A DNA stretch of 62,386 nucleotides, taken from assembly GCA_002811645.1 (NCBI GenBank), contig PDIP01000078.1, positions 68,559 to 130,944 of the forward strand. The letters run 5' to 3'. Both the position numbers and the translations under genes were made by a program. Shown here one piece after another: positions 47,047 to 52,525 of the stretch. Numbering within the stretch: position 1 is the stretch's first letter; every line of letters starts with the position of its first letter. The DNA is from Corallochytrium limacisporum Hawaii. Lineage: Eukaryota; Protista; Pluriformea. The notes beneath the pieces were generated by a model. The model made no database searches, had not been told where the DNA came from, and saw only the letters and a program-made list of their open reading frames with translations.

Positions 47047-48915
47047 ATGAAATTTGGAAAAGAGCTGGAAAGGACCAAGGTTGACGGCTGGGAATGGTAC
47101 TACATTGACTATGCCGACCTCAAGCGGTTTCTGAAACACAAGATGGTGGAAGCACCGGGTGGCCAAACCTTCATGTATAAGGAGGCTGAATTTTATGACA
47201 TGCTTGTCCAGAATCTTGATCGTGTGTCATACTTCAGCTTCCTTAAGTACGATGAAATCCTGTCAGCGATCGCCAATATGGAAGAGACCATTGACAACAT
47301 CCTGACTGCAGAGCACGACGTGCGCGCTGCCCTGTTCCGTCGCCTTGAATCTCTAATTCCCGAGCTTGAGGACATCACAGAGGCCGTGAACAAGTTGGAT
47401 CGCTTCAACCGAACCAACTTTACTGGTTTCTATAAGATCCTTAAGAAGCATGACAAGCAGACCGGGGTTAGCCTGAGGTACGCTTTCCAGCAGGAAATGG
47501 ACAAGCGCCCTTTCTTCAAGTTCCGCTTTGATGATATGATCGCAGAAATTAGTAAACTGTACCAAAAGATCAAGGCGGGAGACGACGATGCGACCTGGGT
47601 GCCGGGTACATCCTTTGTGCGCAAGACCACCAAGTACTGGGTCCACGCCGACAACCTGACCAAGGTGAAACTCGCGATTATGAAGCATTTGCCAGTCTTG
47701 CGTTTTCAAGAAGACCCGGACACACCGTTTGAGCCCCACATTACCTCCATTTACTACGACAACGAGGATCTGGACCTCTACCACGGGCGCATGCGCAAAG
47801 ACGAGGGTGCAGAGGCCATCCGTCTACGTTGGTACGGTACCATGGCGAACCAAGTCTTCTTTGAACGCAAGACCCACCACGAGGACTGGACTGGCTACGA
47901 GTCTGTCAAGGAGCGCTTCATGGTTTCGGAGAAGCACGTCGATGAAGTTTGTGACGGAACCTACGGTCCGGATCGCGTGGCAAAGAAAGTGGCTAAGCGG
48001 AAGAAGAGCCAGAAGGAGGTCGATGCAACTTACCAGCTCGCCTACGAGACCCAACAGAGCATCATCAACAAGAAGCTCAAGCCTTGTGTGCGTACCTACT
48101 ACAAGCGGACTGCTTTCCAGTTGCCCACATCCAATACTGTACGTATCTCCCTGGACGAGGACCTGACTATGGTCGATGAGATGAACAAGACCGGTGGACG
48201 CTGGAGACGTGATGAAGTCGGTGTGGAGTGGCCGTTCTCCCACATTAATAGTGAAGACGTGATTCTGTTCCCCTACGCAGTCCTTGAGGTCAAGCTGTCT
48301 CTGCGCCAGGGCGAGGACCCACCCACCTGGATTGCGAACCTAATCGAATCTCCTTATGTCGAGTGCGTTCCCAAATTTTCCAAGTTCATGCACGGTTGCG
48401 CCACCCTGCACGAGTCAAAGTGCCAGATGTACCCCTATTGGCTGCCTCAGATGGACACGGACATTCGCAAGAGCCCCGAAGAGGTGGCAGAGTACGAGGA
48501 ACGGATCCGTGCGGATGCCAGCACGTCATCGCAGTACAGCCCGACGGAGGACGGCAGTATTGGTGAGCAGGAGCGCCTGAAGCCGAAGTTGATCTTCGCA
48601 AACGAGCGTACCTTCATGAAGTGGTTACACATGAGCCTGTTTGTGGCTACTGGCGGTCTTGTACTACTGGATGCCAAGCACGTCAAGTTCCAGAGCAATG
48701 CAAAATTAACTCGCATCACGGGCATTATTATGACCAGCATCGCGTGTATCTTTGTGCTGGCCGCCGGAGCTCTTTACCTACGCCGTCGGAAGCTCATTGC
48801 CCAAAAGTACGTCGGTTCATGGAACGAATACGTCATGACCGTGACCATGGCACTCGTCTTCCTGGCCGCCATGGCCGCTACTTTTGTGGTACGAATTGGT
48901 GAGCTAGTTAACTAG
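47047..48915 (+). CDS. VTC4: Vacuolar transporter chaperone polyphosphate polymerase (SPX-VTC-DUF202)
   Basis: MKFGK..YIDY..LK and FYKILKKHDK (SPX); FVRKTTKYWVH, AIRLRWYG, FERKTHHEDWTG, VPKFSKFMHG (VTC); FANERTFMKW plus three TM helices. Confidence 0.95.
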   Translation: MKFGKELERTKVDGWEWYYIDYADLKRFLKHKMVEAPGGQTFMYKEAEFYDMLVQNLDRVSYFSFLKYDEILSAIANMEETIDNILTAEHDVRAALFRRLESLIPELEDITEAVNKLDRFNRTNFTGFYKILKKHDKQTGVSLRYAFQQEMDKRPFFKFRFDDMIAEISKLYQKIKAGDDDATWVPGTSFVRKTTKYWVHADNLTKVKLAIMKHLPVLRFQEDPDTPFEPHITSIYYDNEDLDLYHGRMRKDEGAEAIRLRWYGTMANQVFFERKTHHEDWTGYESVKERFMVSEKHVDEVCDGTYGPDRVAKKVAKRKKSQKEVDATYQLAYETQQSIINKKLKPCVRTYYKRTAFQLPTSNTVRISLDEDLTMVDEMNKTGGRWRRDEVGVEWPFSHINSEDVILFPYAVLEVKLSLRQGEDPPTWIANLIESPYVECVPKFSKFMHGCATLHESKCQMYPYWLPQMDTDIRKSPEEVAEYEERIRADASTSSQYSPTEDGSIGEQERLKPKLIFANERTFMKWLHMSLFVATGGLVLLDAKHVKFQSNAKLTRITGIIMTSIACIFVLAAGALYLRRRKLIAQKYVGSWNEYVMTVTMALVFLAAMAATFVVRIGELVN

Positions 48916-49445
48916 ATTGTGTGATATCTTGCTTTACCAGCCCCGAAGAAACTTTTCACATCACCTACGGATGTCACGACCCATTCCATCAAATTTAACT
49001 CATACGAAGCGAAGACAAGCCCTACGTTTCCTCCTGTAAGTAATAGAACACATACGATACAAACACAAATACCACCAGTCTCCGGTAGTTCGCATGCCAA
49101 CGGAGTGTCGAATAGCTGTCCCTATACAGTGTGCTATTCCTAAGAGACCCAACCTCACCCAACGCGGTCGAAGGCACAGAAGAACCAAATTTCCCTGTCC
49201 TTGGCGGGTGGGTTGGCTTGGATCCGCATGGAATTAGAGTGAATTGGGGCCGGGGATGAGACCCACACAAGCGAAACGGGTTTCACCCATCGCACATTTG
49301 ACTCCACGGGCGTTGGTCATTGGCAGGTAGATCAATGAGTGTGTCGCAAACGCTGAAAAGGGGCAATTTCAGAGGAAACTGAGCAATTTCGTGAGTATCA
49401 GAATGAAATGTTCGATTCAAGCGATCGGAACAATGACAGCAGATA

Positions 49446-50783
49446 ATGAATCCTATTCGTAAGTGGTGCGTATCACCGCATATGAGAAGTTCGTATCGCA
49501 ATTTTTTTCAACTCCGTAGCATTAATAGATTTGGCAGCGCCACAAGAAATATGGCGGACTTTGTCGACGAATGGGAGGTCCAAACGGACCGTGGTGCTGA
49601 CCTCCGTCAAGTCGTTGCGACACAGCATCGCCTCTCCCCGGCAAAGTGGCACGCACAAGTCCGAAAGCTCGATCCGGAACTACTCGTTTGTTTCGATGTC
49701 CGTTCCCCGATTGAATTTAAGAAGAGTCACTATCCGCCTGCTGTGAATGTGCCACTCTTCACTGACTCGGAGAGAGCGGAGGTGGGAACGATCTTCAAGA
49801 CCCTGGGACGTCAACAGGCATTGCATCAGGGACTTGAGTTCGTCAGACCAAAGATGGAACAGTATCTGCACTGGGCAAAGGAGAATTCAGAGGATGGTAG
49901 GAAGCATATATACATGTACTGTGCTCGTGGTGGCATGCGATCAGGATCATTGGCATGGTACTTTAGCCAATGTGGTCTCAAAGTTACTCTTCTCGACGGT
50001 GGCTACAAAGCATATCGTGAACGTGTAAGGGCAGAGCTGCGGCAGGTATCGTTACCGCCATTCGTCATGCTTTCCGGGCCCACAGGCTGCGGTAAGTCCC
50101 TGGTTTTGCGGCATTTGCAGTTGAAGCGGGGACAACAGATGCTGGATCTTGAAGCGCTGGCAAACCATCGTGGATCGGTCTTTGGGTCCCTGTTCTTGGG
50201 ATCACAGCCGACACAGGCAATGTTTGAGAACGTCCTGCTTGAACAACTGCTCGACCTTGATGTGAACATACCAACGTGGTGTGAAGCTGAAGGTGGACGG
50301 ATTGGTATAATCTCCGTAGACAAGAATGTTCTTGAGCATATGACCACATCCCCCCTAATGTTCCGCCTCGAGATTGATCGCGAGGAACGCAAGAAGATCA
50401 TCATGGAAGAGTATGGACCTCCAAATGACAATCCTATGGATCAGGCATGGCAGGTCAGCATCTTACAATGCATCGATCAGATTAAGAAGCGGCTTGGCGG
50501 CAAGCTGCATAAAGAATTGACTGAGCAGATCAAGGCTGGTGACTGGGAGCAGACAGTCCTCGAGTTGCTAGACTACTACGATCGCACGTATCGGACGCTG
50601 AAGCCTGAGACTCTCGACCGACACGATCATGTCGAGACTCTGAAGTGGGAAGGTCCATTCGACGTCGATGCCATTTCTACAGAGTTTCTGAAACGATTGG
50701 AGCGGTTCCAGAAGGCACATGGATTTGGCAGACTGGATGAGGAGAACGATAACAAGTTTGCTCACGCGAAGGGCTCCTACTAG
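49446..50783 (+). CDS. selU: tRNA 2-selenouridine synthase (SelU/MnmH/YbbB), bacterial-type, with presequence-like N-terminal extension
   Basis: Rhodanese domain DVRSPIEF...NVPLFTDSERAEVGT...YCARGGMRS...GGYKAYR, followed by a P-loop domain GPTGCGKS, LDLEALANHRGSVFG, EAEGGRIG, IKKRLGG, YYDRTY. In-frame ATGs at 49446, 49482 and 49551. Confidence 0.93.
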   Translation: MNPIRKWCVSPHMRSSYRNFFQLRSINRFGSATRNMADFVDEWEVQTDRGADLRQVVATQHRLSPAKWHAQVRKLDPELLVCFDVRSPIEFKKSHYPPAVNVPLFTDSERAEVGTIFKTLGRQQALHQGLEFVRPKMEQYLHWAKENSEDGRKHIYMYCARGGMRSGSLAWYFSQCGLKVTLLDGGYKAYRERVRAELRQVSLPPFVMLSGPTGCGKSLVLRHLQLKRGQQMLDLEALANHRGSVFGSLFLGSQPTQAMFENVLLEQLLDLDVNIPTWCEAEGGRIGIISVDKNVLEHMTTSPLMFRLEIDREERKKIIMEEYGPPNDNPMDQAWQVSILQCIDQIKKRLGGKLHKELTEQIKAGDWEQTVLELLDYYDRTYRTLKPETLDRHDHVETLKWEGPFDVDAISTEFLKRLERFQKAHGFGRLDEENDNKFAHAKGSY

Positions 50784-50973
50784 CTTCAACACAAGTGTTA
50801 AAAGCTATGAAGAACCTAGAGCTAGTTAAATTAAGAACAATCGTATGTAACACTGCGTGTAAGCCTATATAGTAAAAGATTATGGATACAAGAGAATGAT
50901 GGAGATCATGAGCTGGAAGGTTTAGTTCGAGATAGGGTCCAAATATTGGGGAAACCTCGGTGCATGTTTGCAC

Positions 50974-51891
50974 TTAGTCCTCGTCCTCTTCGCTGCTCTC
51001 GTCATCATCTCCGGGCACCTCCTGGTTCGCAAGCTCAAGGTCTTCCATCATACGTTCCAAAGCCTTGTCCTCAGCGGCAGAGATAGCGCGAGGAGGCTCA
51101 TGCACACTCATAAAGCCACCGCTGGCCTCGATATTCTTCTTTACCACATCGATACACTTTTGTAGAGCAGTAATGCCCATATCCTTGTCCATGGACGTGG
51201 TGGACAGTACGTAGATAGGAGGGGCCCACAGGTTGATCTTGATTGGTAGCTCCTCAGTACTAATAGCCTGACCAGCCTTCAAGGCCGCCTTAATGGCATC
51301 GATACCTTCCTCGTTGTAGCAACTGAGCTGGATATCAGCACGAATCTTGGCAGCCTGGGGGGCCAACCGCCGCTGGACATCCTTGAGCAGGAGTTGTTTA
51401 GTGTTGTCGTCAATGTCAAGCTGGGTCATGATCTCATCTGGGTTGGTGATCATCACCTTGAAGGCATCGTAGGCACTAGGGTAGGACTTCTCGAGCTTCC
51501 AAGCGGTCTTCTCATACAGCTCCTCCAAGGATGCTCCGTTTTGTGCAGAAACGTGGCTCAAAATGCTGTGCACAGCCTTGGCCTTTTGGTAGCGGTCCTC
51601 GCACTCCTTGACATCTTCCCGGTTCACACGGCGCTTACTCAGATCAATGTATCCCTTCTCCTTATCCACACGCAAAACCATGACACACTCTGTGCGGCCA
51701 ACACGAATCAACTTGTTGATAGAACGGATGCGACGCCGACTCAGTTCGGACAACAAGATCATACCCTCCATCTTGTTATATTCAAGCAATTGTACGTAGG
51801 CACCCATTTCAGCAATCTTCACCACACTGACCATTACGACATCGTCAATGTCGGGAAATTTCTTGCTGTAAAACCGACACTCGTTGCTCAT
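50974..51891 (-). CDS. EIF2S1: Eukaryotic translation initiation factor 2 subunit alpha
   Basis: CRFY..KFP, MILLSELSRRRIRSINKLIRVGR (regulatory Ser51 loop), KGYIDLSKRRV. Confidence 0.99.
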   Translation of the reverse strand: MSNECRFYSKKFPDIDDVVMVSVVKIAEMGAYVQLLEYNKMEGMILLSELSRRRIRSINKLIRVGRTECVMVLRVDKEKGYIDLSKRRVNREDVKECEDRYQKAKAVHSILSHVSAQNGASLEELYEKTAWKLEKSYPSAYDAFKVMITNPDEIMTQLDIDDNTKQLLLKDVQRRLAPQAAKIRADIQLSCYNEEGIDAIKAALKAGQAISTEELPIKINLWAPPIYVLSTTSMDKDMGITALQKCIDVVKKNIEASGGFMSVHEPPRAISAAEDKALERMMEDLELANQEVPGDDDESSEEDED

Positions 51892-52525
51892 TGTTGTGGT
51901 TTGTGTGTATGACTCTTGTGTTGACTATTTCGGCTATTTTTAATTCTCCTTAAGAATTGCAAATGAACTCTCAGGCTAGCTTCTATTTGAACGTTTACGC
52001 ACCCTAAGTCACTGTGTCAATGTTGTTCACGTCAACTGTACAGATATACACGTATAGTTGTGAAGATCAAATAACTGATTCAGTAGTCTCGGAGCATCCA
52101 AGATAGATTGCAGCATTTAATAACGGCCCACACCGTTACACAACCTGGACAGGGCACACAGCTACGCATTTTATCGTCAATGCAAAGCCCTAGCCTATCA
52201 AAGGTGTAAACGGAGCCCGGCCAGTCTCTGTGTTTGCCCTTGATTTGAATTCCGAGTCACTCCTTTGTTCTTCTCTTTTCAGTGTGCCCTAGTAGTCGCG
52301 AATCTCTGGCATTTCTAATTTTTGGCCCTTTTCCATGTAGCGAGTTCAACACGTGGGGAGAACTGCGTTCCAGAGCGGGAATTGATTCATCCTTCCCACA
52401 GATGCTAAATACACCAAATACCTGAAGAGAGGGCTCTGATTAAAATGACGAGCTACGGCTATATATTATGTACTACATACACAGAAAAAAGAGAAATCAT
52501 AAAATCCAATCACATGCGGGATTCC

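What the first reader, a model, noticed from the sequence alone, without database searches (positions are those of the whole stretch)
49446..50783. Bacterial-type tRNA 2-selenouridine synthase (SelU) in a eukaryotic chromosome, with a mitochondrial-presequence-like N-terminus
Seen: an intact rhodanese plus P-loop SelU with the catalytic-loop Cys (YCARGGMRS), lying between VTC4 and eIF2-alpha, so it is not a separate bacterial contig. The 35 aa before MADF (MNPIRKWCVSPHMRSSYRNFFQLRSINRFGSATRN) are rich in R/S/F and contain no D/E. Established: bacterial SelU geranylates wobble 5-substituted 2-thiouridine in tRNA Lys/Glu/Gln and converts it to 2-selenouridine using selenophosphate from SelD; mitochondrial tRNAs carry bacterial-type xm5s2U made by MTO1/MSS1/MTU1; animals and model fungi lack SelU. 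Inference: a horizontally acquired or relict enzyme giving this eukaryote a mitochondrial (or, via ATG 49551, also cytosolic) selenouridine/geranyl-thiouridine pathway. SelU-like genes may already be noted in some algae and protists, so novelty needs checking.
Basis: partly seen in the sequence, partly recalled or inferred. Interest (0 to 1): 0.9.

Follow-up and report, generated by a model that had tools for sequence, protein, structure and literature searches.

The report
Selenouridine synthase gene in an animal relative
A single-celled marine relative of animals carries an intact, transcribed, bacterial-type tRNA 2-selenouridine synthase gene alongside a selenophosphate synthetase gene, so it may put selenium into its tRNAs, but the proposed mitochondrial targeting peptide looks like untranslated leader.

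Summary
ORF 49446-50783 (+) is an intact SelU/MnmH. It scores above the curated cut-offs of two NCBIfam equivalog models. It keeps the catalytic Cys, the SelU-specific rhodanese insertion and the Walker A lysine. It lies between VTC4 and eIF2-alpha in a non-photosynthetic holozoan protist.

Transcript-like contigs from two strains cover the gene and link it to eIF2-alpha. The only difference between strains in the 1233-nt core is synonymous. The genome also encodes a Sec-containing SPS2, mitochondrial MnmA/MnmE/MnmG, cytosolic CTU1/CTU2 and polyprenyl synthases.

The mitochondrial presequence is not supported. The 35 upstream codons have UTR-like composition (GC3 0.37 against 0.57-0.68). They carry 4 of 4 non-synonymous strain differences at about 17 times the coding density. 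Three out-of-frame upstream ATGs precede them in the transcript. ATG 49551 has the better context, and MADF aligns with an N-terminal motif conserved in eukaryotic homologues. Translation from 49551, giving a cytosolic enzyme beside SPS2, is most likely.

Eukaryotic SelU genes are already in databases (prasinophyte green algae, a choanoflagellate). I found no paper describing them. Whether this copy shares their origin or came separately from bacteria is unresolved. Verdict: a new member of a known kind, moderately interesting. The scan holds no earlier selenium-related note on this genome.

The parts
49551..50783 (+). Most likely SelU/MnmH coding sequence (410 aa, starts MADF; stop TAG 50781-50783)
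   Evidence: The public database holds the 410-aa model (P0001). ATG 49551 has A at -3 and G at +4. One synonymous SNP in 1233 nt between strains. MADF aligns with the conserved (M/L/I)(D/E)xF motif of 9 eukaryotic SelUs. AlphaFold model: mean pLDDT 82.6, pTM 0.78.
49446..49550 (+). In-frame upstream 35 codons (MNPIRK...ATRN): the proposed presequence, more likely 5' leader
   Evidence: GC 0.40 and GC3 0.37, against coding GC3 of 0.57-0.68. Four SNPs, all non-synonymous (N2D, W7L, R18C, N19I). SNP density 4/105 against 9/4020, Fisher p=2.4e-4; nonsyn:syn 4:0 against 1:8, p=0.007. In-frame TGA at 49434 bounds the frame.
49390..49445 (+). 5' leader present in transcript-like contigs, with out-of-frame upstream ATGs at 49403, 49408 and 49433
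   Evidence: Contig 5' ends lie at 49390 (X2) and 49399 (X1). The uORFs run 49403-49462 (19 codons, running past ATG 49446), 49408-49446 (12 codons, its TAA overlapping ATG 49446 as TAATG) and 49433-49462.
49683..50021 (+). Rhodanese domain with the SelU-specific insertion; catalytic Cys159 codon TGT at 49920-49922 in YCARGGMRS
   Evidence: Pfam PF00581, residues 80-192. Cys159 = E. coli C97, Gly129 = G67, Ala125 = A63, Arg191 = R129. The fold matches 3g5j, the N-terminal domain of a C. difficile SelU-like protein (TM 0.86, 38% identity).
50058..50609 (+). P-loop (AAA_SelU) domain; Walker A GPTGCGKS at 50076-50099 (Lys217 = E. coli K155)
   Evidence: PF26341 is precomputed for P0001. Alignment to E. 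coli SelU. Adenylate-kinase-like fold matches.
50406..50501 (+). 32-residue EEYG...KRLGG segment with a Trp 12 residues before KRLGG; this length and spacing are shared with eukaryotic SelUs
   Evidence: The segment is 24 residues in 133 of 157 rows (bacteria). It is 31-35 residues (40 in P0279) with the Trp at the same spacing in all green-algal and choanoflagellate SelUs. A Bacillota relative has 28 residues with Phe at that position.
50784..50973 (.). 190-nt 3' region shared by the convergent SelU and eIF2-alpha transcripts
   Evidence: Contigs of both strains run through it without a gap (X1 50150-51991, X2 49390-52012). GC is 0.38.
47047..48915 (+). Upstream neighbour VTC4 (SPX + VTC + DUF202)
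   Evidence: Pfam. A transcript-like contig ends at 49066 (X1) or 49049 (X2), and nothing covers the stretch from there to 49389.
50974..51891 (-). Downstream convergent neighbour eIF2-alpha
   Evidence: Pfam S1 + EIF_2_alpha. The best named relatives are holozoan protists (Sphaerothecum destruens 62%, Salpingoeca punica 58%).

Best explanation
This is a functional nuclear gene for a SelU/MnmH-type tRNA 2-selenouridine synthase in a non-photosynthetic marine holozoan protist. Shown: the gene is intact, it carries every sequence hallmark of the bacterial enzyme, it is covered by transcript-like contigs in two strains, and its core shows only a synonymous strain difference. The same genome encodes a selenocysteine-containing selenophosphate synthetase (SPS2) with no N-terminal extension, both 2-thiouridine pathways, and polyprenyl synthases. 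Inferred: translation starts mainly at ATG 49551, giving a 410-residue enzyme without a targeting peptide. This enzyme works in the cytosol beside SPS2. There it geranylates the 2-thio group of wobble xm5s2U34 in tRNA-Lys/Glu/Gln (in eukaryotic cytosol, mcm5s2U) using geranyl-PP bound at the P-loop. It then replaces S-geranyl with selenium from selenophosphate through the rhodanese Cys159, as shown for E. coli and Salmonella SelU. The 35 upstream in-frame codons are part of a uORF-bearing 5' leader, not a conserved presequence.
For: Family: TIGR03167 301 bits (cut-off 219.75) and NF008750 307.6 bits (cut-off 241). Cys159=C97, Gly129=G67, Ala125=A63, Arg191=R129, Lys217=K155; these features are defined in PMC4830565. 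Nuclear and expressed: eukaryotic neighbours. Contigs of two strains cover genes but not intergenic DNA, and span SelU plus eIF2-alpha. GC3 is 0.569, within the window's genes (0.596 +/- 0.047). Constraint: one synonymous SNP in the 1233-nt core. Pathway: SPS2 with TGA at the Sec position (..KLKG*GCKVP..), starting MATQDT. CTU1-like and CTU2. MnmA, MnmG, MnmE. Four polyprenyl synthases. Start at 49551: leader-like GC/GC3, 4 of 4 non-synonymous SNPs at 17 times the coding density (p=2.4e-4; nonsyn:syn p=0.007). uATGs at 49403, 49408 and 49433 lie inside the contigs. Context is A-3/G+4 at 49551, against +4 A at 49446 and C-3 at 49482. Phe4 of MADF is invariant in the alignment of 10 eukaryotic SelUs, and the 9 homologues in it have acidic, non-presequence N-termini.
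Against: No biochemical evidence exists for Se2U or ges2U in this organism. The runs are only guessed to be RNA and are held as contigs, so they give no strand, no true 5' end and no translation start. The upstream frame stays open in both strains and is basic. The mitochondrial MnmA/MnmE/MnmG of the same genome have similar R/S-rich N-termini. The choanoflagellate homologue has an R/S-rich N-terminus. Mitochondrial presequences evolve fast, so weak constraint does not exclude one. Activity of a bacterial-type SelU on mcm5s2U-tRNA has not been shown; E. coli SelU accepts s2U with different or no C5 groups (PMC4830565).
Confidence: 0.55

Rival explanations
1. Translation starts at ATG 49446 (or 49482). 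The 35 (or 23) extra residues act as a mitochondrial presequence. SelU selenates or geranylates bacterial-type xm5s2U in mitochondrial tRNA-Lys/Glu/Gln.
For: The stretch is basic, S/F-rich and free of D/E in the window strain. The transcript-like contigs include ATG 49446. The genome's single MnmA, MnmG and MnmE have comparable N-terminal extensions, so the natural bacterial-type substrate is mitochondrial. The choanoflagellate SelU has an R/S-rich N-terminus.
Against: All 4 strain differences are non-synonymous, one introduces Asp, and their density is 17 times that of coding sequence. GC3 is 0.37. Three out-of-frame uATGs precede 49446, and two of their uORFs run past it. ATG 49551 has the better context. 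The 9 homologues in the eukaryotic alignment lack presequence-like N-termini, and the conserved motif begins at MADF. The only SPS2 has no presequence, so selenophosphate would be made in another compartment. Basic, acid-poor peptides are expected from translating leader DNA.
Confidence: 0.15
2. Dual localisation. Leaky scanning or reinitiation after the uORFs yields a minor long form imported into mitochondria and a major short cytosolic form, so both tRNA pools are modified.
For: Three in-frame ATGs (49446, 49482, 49551) sit in one transcript with uORFs. One uORF stop overlaps ATG 49446 as TAATG. Both cytosolic and mitochondrial s2U pathways exist.
Against: The polymorphism and composition arguments apply here as they do to the mitochondrial model. 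There is no direct evidence that any upstream start is used.
Confidence: 0.15
3. The enzyme is retained for a different activity from selenation: for example only S-geranylation of tRNA, or another sulfur or selenium transfer.
For: SelU has two separable activities, and geranylation does not need Cys97 (PMC4830565). The protein is on a long branch (1.04-1.3 against a median of 0.54-0.69). Related eukaryotic SelUs are fused to GFA or TPR modules, which hints at altered contexts.
Against: The catalytic Cys and its loop, needed only for selenation, are strictly kept. A Sec-type SPS2 co-occurs.
Confidence: 0.1
4. The gene is an assembly artefact or bacterial contamination and not part of the eukaryotic genome.
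For: The closest database relatives (41-44% identity) are bacterial.
Against: The gene lies on the same contig as VTC4 and eIF2-alpha. Independent contigs from two strains bridge SelU and eIF2-alpha. Composition matches the host. No bacterial sequence is more than 44% identical.
Confidence: 0.02

Closest known systems
Bacterial tRNA 2-selenouridine synthase SelU/MnmH/YbbB (E. coli b0503; Salmonella MnmH)
   Same: Same two-domain layout (rhodanese with the SelU-specific insertion, plus a P-loop). The catalytic Cys (C97=C159), G67, A63, R129 and Walker A Lys (K155=K217) are all present. It scores above two equivalog HMM cut-offs and co-occurs with a selenophosphate synthetase.
   Different: 33% identical to E. 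coli SelU and at most 44% to any bacterial protein. It is a nuclear eukaryotic gene with UTRs and uORFs. It has about 30 extra residues between the N-terminal motif and the rhodanese domain, an 8-residue Trp-containing insertion, and GKS instead of GKT. Its probable substrate is eukaryotic mcm5s2U rather than (c)mnm5s2U.
Eukaryotic SelU-like proteins in public databases: Bathycoccus prasinos and other Mamiellales-type picoalgae, Cymbomonas tetramitiformis KAK3266923.1 ('Rhodanese domain-containing protein'), Dinoflagellata sp. TGD, Stephanoeca diplocostata EP00041_P023792
   Same: Nuclear eukaryotic context. Same domains. They share the N-terminal (M/L/I)(D/E)xF motif, the lengthened EEY..KRLGG segment with Trp at the same spacing, and mostly acidic N-termini without targeting peptides.
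   Different: Only 31-38% identical to the window protein. They form a supported clade (99/94 to 100/93) that leaves the window protein out in ML trees, although an AU test does not reject joining them (p 0.53 and 0.47). Some carry GFA or TPR fusions that are absent here.
Archaeal split SelU (Methanococcales; TIGR04568 / TIGR04569)
   Same: Homologous rhodanese and P-loop halves, both needed for selenation (PMC4830565). The window protein gives weak hits to both models (81.6 and 33.1 bits).
   Different: The archaeal enzyme is encoded by two genes. The window protein is a single chain and scores far below the archaeal cut-offs (200 and 180 bits).

Membership tests
SelU/MnmH tRNA 2-selenouridine synthase | Scores above the curated cut-off of an equivalog family model | tested here: met
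   TIGR03167: 301 bits against a cut-off of 219.75. NF008750: 307.6 bits against 241. PF00581 + PF26341 are precomputed for the 410-aa model.
SelU/MnmH tRNA 2-selenouridine synthase | Rhodanese domain with the catalytic Cys (E. coli C97, C-x-x-G loop), required for selenation | tested here: met
   Cys159 in YCARGGMRS aligns with C97 in CCARGGQRS and is invariant in alignments A1 and A2. The feature is defined in PMC4830565.
SelU/MnmH tRNA 2-selenouridine synthase | SelU-specific insertion of about 33-36 residues in the rhodanese domain, with conserved A63, G67 and R129 | tested here: met
   PLFTDSERAEVGTIFKTLGRQQALHQGLEFV aligns without gaps to the E. coli insertion. A125, G129 and R191 are conserved.
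SelU/MnmH tRNA 2-selenouridine synthase | P-loop domain with Walker A G-x4-GK[ST]; Lys (K155) required for geranylation | tested here: met
   GPTGCGKS, Lys217 = K155. The fold is adenylate-kinase-like.
SelU/MnmH tRNA 2-selenouridine synthase | Co-occurrence with selenophosphate synthetase and with a 2-thiouridine-forming pathway | tested here: met
   SPS2 with in-frame TGA at the Sec position. MnmA/MnmG/MnmE. CTU1-like and CTU2.
SelU/MnmH tRNA 2-selenouridine synthase | Enzyme activity: s2U to ges2U to Se2U in tRNA | not testable with these tools
   Needs LC-MS of tRNA nucleosides, 75Se labelling, complementation or an in vitro assay.
Mitochondrial matrix-targeted protein (N-terminal presequence) | The N-terminal extension is translated, meaning the first usable AUG of the mRNA opens it | tested here: not met
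   Three out-of-frame AUGs (49403, 49408, 49433) precede 49446 within the transcript-like contigs. The uORFs from 49403 and 49433 read past it. ATG 49551 has the stronger context. This is indirect: no start-site mapping was possible.
Mitochondrial matrix-targeted protein (N-terminal presequence) | The extension is under coding constraint and has coding composition | tested here: not met
   4 of 4 strain SNPs are non-synonymous (including N2D). SNP density is 17 times the coding density (p=2.4e-4). GC3 is 0.37 against 0.57-0.68.
Mitochondrial matrix-targeted protein (N-terminal presequence) | Basic, hydroxylated, acid-free N-terminus | tested here: inconclusive
   Met in the window strain (7 R/K, 0 D/E). 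However, 5.4 R/K are expected from random local sequence, and the second strain has Asp2. No TargetP or MitoFates was available.
Eukaryotic SelU clade (green algae, choanoflagellate) | Groups with that clade in a phylogeny | tested here: inconclusive
   The ML trees (LG+G4 and C20 mixture) place the protein outside that clade, beside Bacillota and one unidentified short sequence, P0274 (89/91, 91/81; in the C20 tree beside the two Bacillota only, 85/8). The FastTree overview left it in an unresolved 15-row group with the clade (87). AU tests do not reject the clade (p 0.53; p 0.47).
Eukaryotic SelU clade (green algae, choanoflagellate) | Shared sequence signatures: lengthened EEY..KRLGG segment with Trp at -13, and the N-terminal (M/L/I)(D/E)xF motif | tested here: met
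   Caveat: a Bacillota SelU has a shorter version with Phe at the same spacing, so the signature is not exclusive to eukaryotes.

The most novel reading that the evidence does not exclude
The window gene and the green-algal and choanoflagellate SelUs form one eukaryotic family of cytosolic tRNA selenouridine synthases. These enzymes would use selenophosphate from SPS2 to make mcm5Se2U in cytosolic tRNA-Lys/Glu/Gln. If so, selenouridine is not a prokaryote-only trait: it is a patchily retained eukaryotic one that reaches into Holozoa. That would give the first enzyme to explain old reports of selenium-containing tRNAs in eukaryotes.
Probability: 0.35. Interest if true: 0.75.

Novelty: new member of a known kind. 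Interest (0 to 1): 0.55.

Why it matters
Reviews treat tRNA selenouridine as a prokaryotic trait (PMC9312934, PMC4561486). Selenium-containing tRNAs were nevertheless reported decades ago in Chlamydomonas, plants and mammalian cells, with no enzyme or position assigned (PMC7216251).

Here an intact, expressed SelU sits beside a Sec-type SPS2 in a unicellular relative of animals. Homologues occur in prasinophyte algae and a choanoflagellate. This offers a concrete candidate enzyme and a culturable organism in which to test for eukaryotic Se2U or ges2U.

It would also tie selenium supply to decoding of Lys/Glu/Gln codons in marine protists. The practical correction for annotation is that the start is probably ATG 49551 and the protein is probably not mitochondrial.

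Tried and rejected
- **Contamination or chimera:** rejected on neighbours, composition and bridging contigs from two strains.
- **Plastid targeting:** rejected. No LHC gene is found in the genome and the protein has no signal peptide.
- **Close eukaryotic orthologue:** none above 44% identity in 5.8 billion proteins or 1.84 billion representatives. The best hits P0002-P0005 lie on bacterial contigs.
- **Long hits assumed eukaryotic:** P0263 (476 aa) is bacterial. P0372 is ambiguous.
- **Literature:** seven full-text searches and eight papers read gave no description of a eukaryotic ybbB/SelU gene. The microalgal review PMC10215577 lists mnmH mainly for bacteria.
- **Phylogeny:** the 157-row IQ-TREE mixture run did not finish. 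It was replaced by FastTree and by reduced IQ-TREE runs. None resolves the window protein's position.
- **The Trp insertion as a clean synapomorphy:** weakened by a Bacillota sequence with a shorter, Phe-containing version.
- **Solved structures:** only the rhodanese fragment 3g5j matches; no full-length SelU is solved.
- **Earlier scan notes:** none on selenium.
- **Not done:** TargetP or MitoFates (not available), raw-read mapping of 5' ends (only contigs were served), complex prediction (no binding claim is made).
- **Organism name:** run names are coded. Holozoan placement rests on eIF2-alpha relatives. The species guess, Corallochytrium limacisporum, rests on my memory of its roughly 24-Mb genome and is not verified.
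Full report
**Observation.** ORF 49446-50783 on the + strand is open for 445 codons. Pfam finds a Rhodanese domain at residues 80-192. NCBIfam places the protein above the curated cut-offs of two MnmH equivalog models: TIGR03167 at 301 bits against 219.75, and NF008750 at 307.6 bits against 241.

I aligned it with E. coli K-12 SelU (b0503, fetched). The features that PMC4830565 defines for the enzyme are all present:
- Cys159 in YCARGGMRS matches the catalytic C97.
- The SelU-specific rhodanese insertion is complete, with Ala125=A63 and Gly129=G67. Arg191, further along the rhodanese domain, matches R129.
- The Walker A motif GPTGCGKS has Lys217=K155.

An AlphaFold model built on ten eukaryotic homologues is confident (pLDDT 82.6, pTM 0.78). 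Its rhodanese half matches 3g5j, the N-terminal domain of a Clostridioides SelU-like protein (TM 0.86). Its P-loop half matches adenylate-kinase-like folds. No full-length SelU structure exists in the PDB.

**Genomic setting.** The neighbours are a VTC4 (SPX+VTC+DUF202) and a convergent eIF2-alpha. The assembly is 24.1 Mb in 286 contigs, with one SelU copy and no light-harvesting-complex gene. The best named relatives of its eIF2-alpha are holozoan protists: Sphaerothecum destruens at 62%, choanoflagellates at 58%, and animals at 55-59%. A marine metatranscriptome holds an identical piece of the locus. The host is therefore a non-photosynthetic marine unicellular relative of animals. GC and GC3 of SelU (0.516 and 0.569) lie within the window's genes (GC3 0.596 +/- 0.047).

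**Expression and linkage.** Two runs of the same organism, differing by about 0.3% and so representing two strains, are held as contigs. These contigs cover VTC4 up to 49066 (X1) or 49049 (X2), skip the stretch from there to 49389, and resume at 49390 (X2) or 49399 (X1). They then run through SelU and eIF2-alpha to about 52000 and stop. This gene-only coverage is what transcript assemblies give, although the tool marks 'RNA' as a guess. The contigs link SelU to eIF2-alpha independently of the genome assembly. The SelU core shows a single synonymous difference in 1233 nt, and the flanking genes show 7 synonymous and 1 non-synonymous. The gene is intact in both strains, and what little varies in coding sequence is almost all synonymous.

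**The proposed presequence.** Several independent observations argue that they are leader, not coding sequence:
- Four strain differences fall in these 105 nt and all change the residue (N2D, W7L, R18C, N19I). The density is 17 times that of the three coding regions (Fisher p=2.4e-4). The nonsyn:syn ratio is 4:0 against 1:8 (p=0.007).
- GC is 0.40 and GC3 is 0.37, like the 3' UTR (0.38) and unlike coding sequence (GC3 0.57-0.68).
- The contigs start 47-56 nt upstream of ATG 49446 and contain three out-of-frame ATGs (49403, 49408, 49433). The uORFs from 49403 and 49433 read past 49446 and stop at 49460-49462.
- ATG 49551 has A-3/G+4, while 49446 has +4 A and 49482 has C-3. The public database already models the protein as 410 aa.
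- In an alignment of ten eukaryotic SelUs, the motif (M/L/I)(D/E)xF aligns exactly with MADF (Phe invariant). The nine homologues in it have acidic N-termini with no presequence character.
- Translating local non-coding sequence is expected to give 5.4 R/K in 34 codons. It gives no D/E with p about 0.06, given an open frame.

The case for the presequence rests on three points. The frame is open in both strains. The genome's single MnmA, MnmG and MnmE have similar R/S-rich N-termini. The choanoflagellate homologue has an R/S-rich N-terminus. I rate mitochondrial-only targeting at about 0.15 and dual targeting at about 0.15.

**Pathway context.** The genome encodes the following:
- An SPS2-type selenophosphate synthetase with an in-frame TGA at the canonical Sec position (..KLKG*GCKVP..) and an unextended N-terminus, MATQDT.
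- The cytosolic 2-thiolation pair: a CTU1-like protein (PP-loop plus zinc ribbon) and CTU2.
- The mitochondrial-type MnmA, MnmE and MnmG.
- Four polyprenyl synthases as a source of geranyl-PP.

A cytosolic SelU would share a compartment with SPS2 and with mcm5s2U-tRNAs. The mechanism I infer is the one established for bacterial SelU: P-loop-dependent S-geranylation, followed by Cys-dependent replacement with selenium from selenophosphate (PMC4830565; Sierant et al. 2018, as cited in PMC9312934).

**Relatives and origin.** No protein in 5.8 billion, or in 1.84 billion representatives, is more than 44% identical. The best hits are bacterial by gene context.

Eukaryotic SelUs do exist:
- An ESM-Atlas cluster that is 92% Eukaryota.
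- Picoalgal genes flanked by LHC, Rubisco-binding and Rad51 genes.
- Bathycoccus prasinos, Cymbomonas tetramitiformis, a green-plastid dinoflagellate and an MMETSP transcript.
- The choanoflagellate Stephanoeca diplocostata, as a SelU-GFA fusion.

These form a supported clade (99/94 and 100/93; 94/98 under the C20 mixture model). In ML trees under LG+G4 and a C20 mixture model, the window protein sits on a long branch outside that clade. It lies next to two Bacillota sequences and one unidentified short sequence, P0274, with weak support (89/91 and 91/81; under C20 beside the two Bacillota only, 85/8). A FastTree overview of all 157 rows instead left it in an unresolved 15-row group with the clade (support 87). 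AU tests do not reject uniting it with the eukaryotic clade (p=0.53, with the constrained tree 2.6 lnL better; p=0.47).

The window protein shares two signatures with all eukaryotic members: the N-terminal motif, and a lengthened EEY..KRLGG segment (31-35 residues, 40 in P0279, against 24 in 133 of 157 rows) with a Trp 12 residues before KRLGG. A Bacillota sequence has a shorter version with Phe at that spot, so the signature is suggestive, not decisive. Common origin with the other eukaryotic SelUs and separate acquisition from bacteria are about equally likely.

**Novelty.** Full-text searches found no paper describing a eukaryotic SelU/ybbB gene. Reviews present selenouridine as prokaryotic. 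PMC7216251 recalls unexplained reports of Se-containing tRNAs in Chlamydomonas, plants and mammals. The gene family and mechanism are known, and eukaryotic homologues are already deposited (some annotated only as rhodanese proteins). This is therefore a new member of a known kind, in an unusual and experimentally useful host.

Noticed in passing
P0452 (Stephanoeca diplocostata EP00041_P023792), P0272, P0279: SelU is fused at its C-terminus to a GFA (glutathione-dependent formaldehyde-activating, PF04828) domain in a choanoflagellate and in two related transcript-derived proteins. The choanoflagellate protein also has a 178-residue N-terminal extension whose first 30 residues are R/S-rich.
   Followed up: partly
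P0327 (Cymbomonas tetramitiformis KAK3266923.1): This green-algal SelU carries TPR repeats inserted between the rhodanese and P-loop parts (Pfam TPR hits at residues 238-344). Its source annotates it only as a rhodanese-domain protein.
   Followed up: no
G000:C14:29429-30268 (-), locus L001: SPS2/SelD gene with an in-frame TGA at the canonical selenocysteine position (..KLKG*GCKVP..). The organism therefore decodes Sec. SECIS, tRNA-Sec and the other Sec factors were not looked for.
   Followed up: partly
window 49403-49462: Three short upstream ORFs lie in the SelU leader. The stop of one (TAA 49444-49446) overlaps ATG 49446 as TAATG. This could allow translational control or termination-reinitiation.
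   Followed up: partly
G000:C170 (L007), C285 (L008), C230 (L009): There is only one copy each of MnmA, MnmG and MnmE, each with an R/S-rich N-terminal extension of about 35-45 residues typical of mitochondrial import.
   Followed up: partly
window 50784-50973: The convergent SelU and eIF2-alpha genes are 190 nt apart, and contigs from both strains run through the gap. Their 3' UTRs therefore abut or overlap.
   Followed up: no
locus L006 (bacterial contig, Logan ERR14048367): A bacterial SelU sits in an apparent selenium operon: SelU, TusA/DsrE, NifS-like aminotransferase, Se_S_carrier, SelD.
   Followed up: no
whole genome G000: No chlorophyll a/b-binding (LHC) gene was detected in the 24.1-Mb assembly, which fits a heterotroph.
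   Followed up: partly
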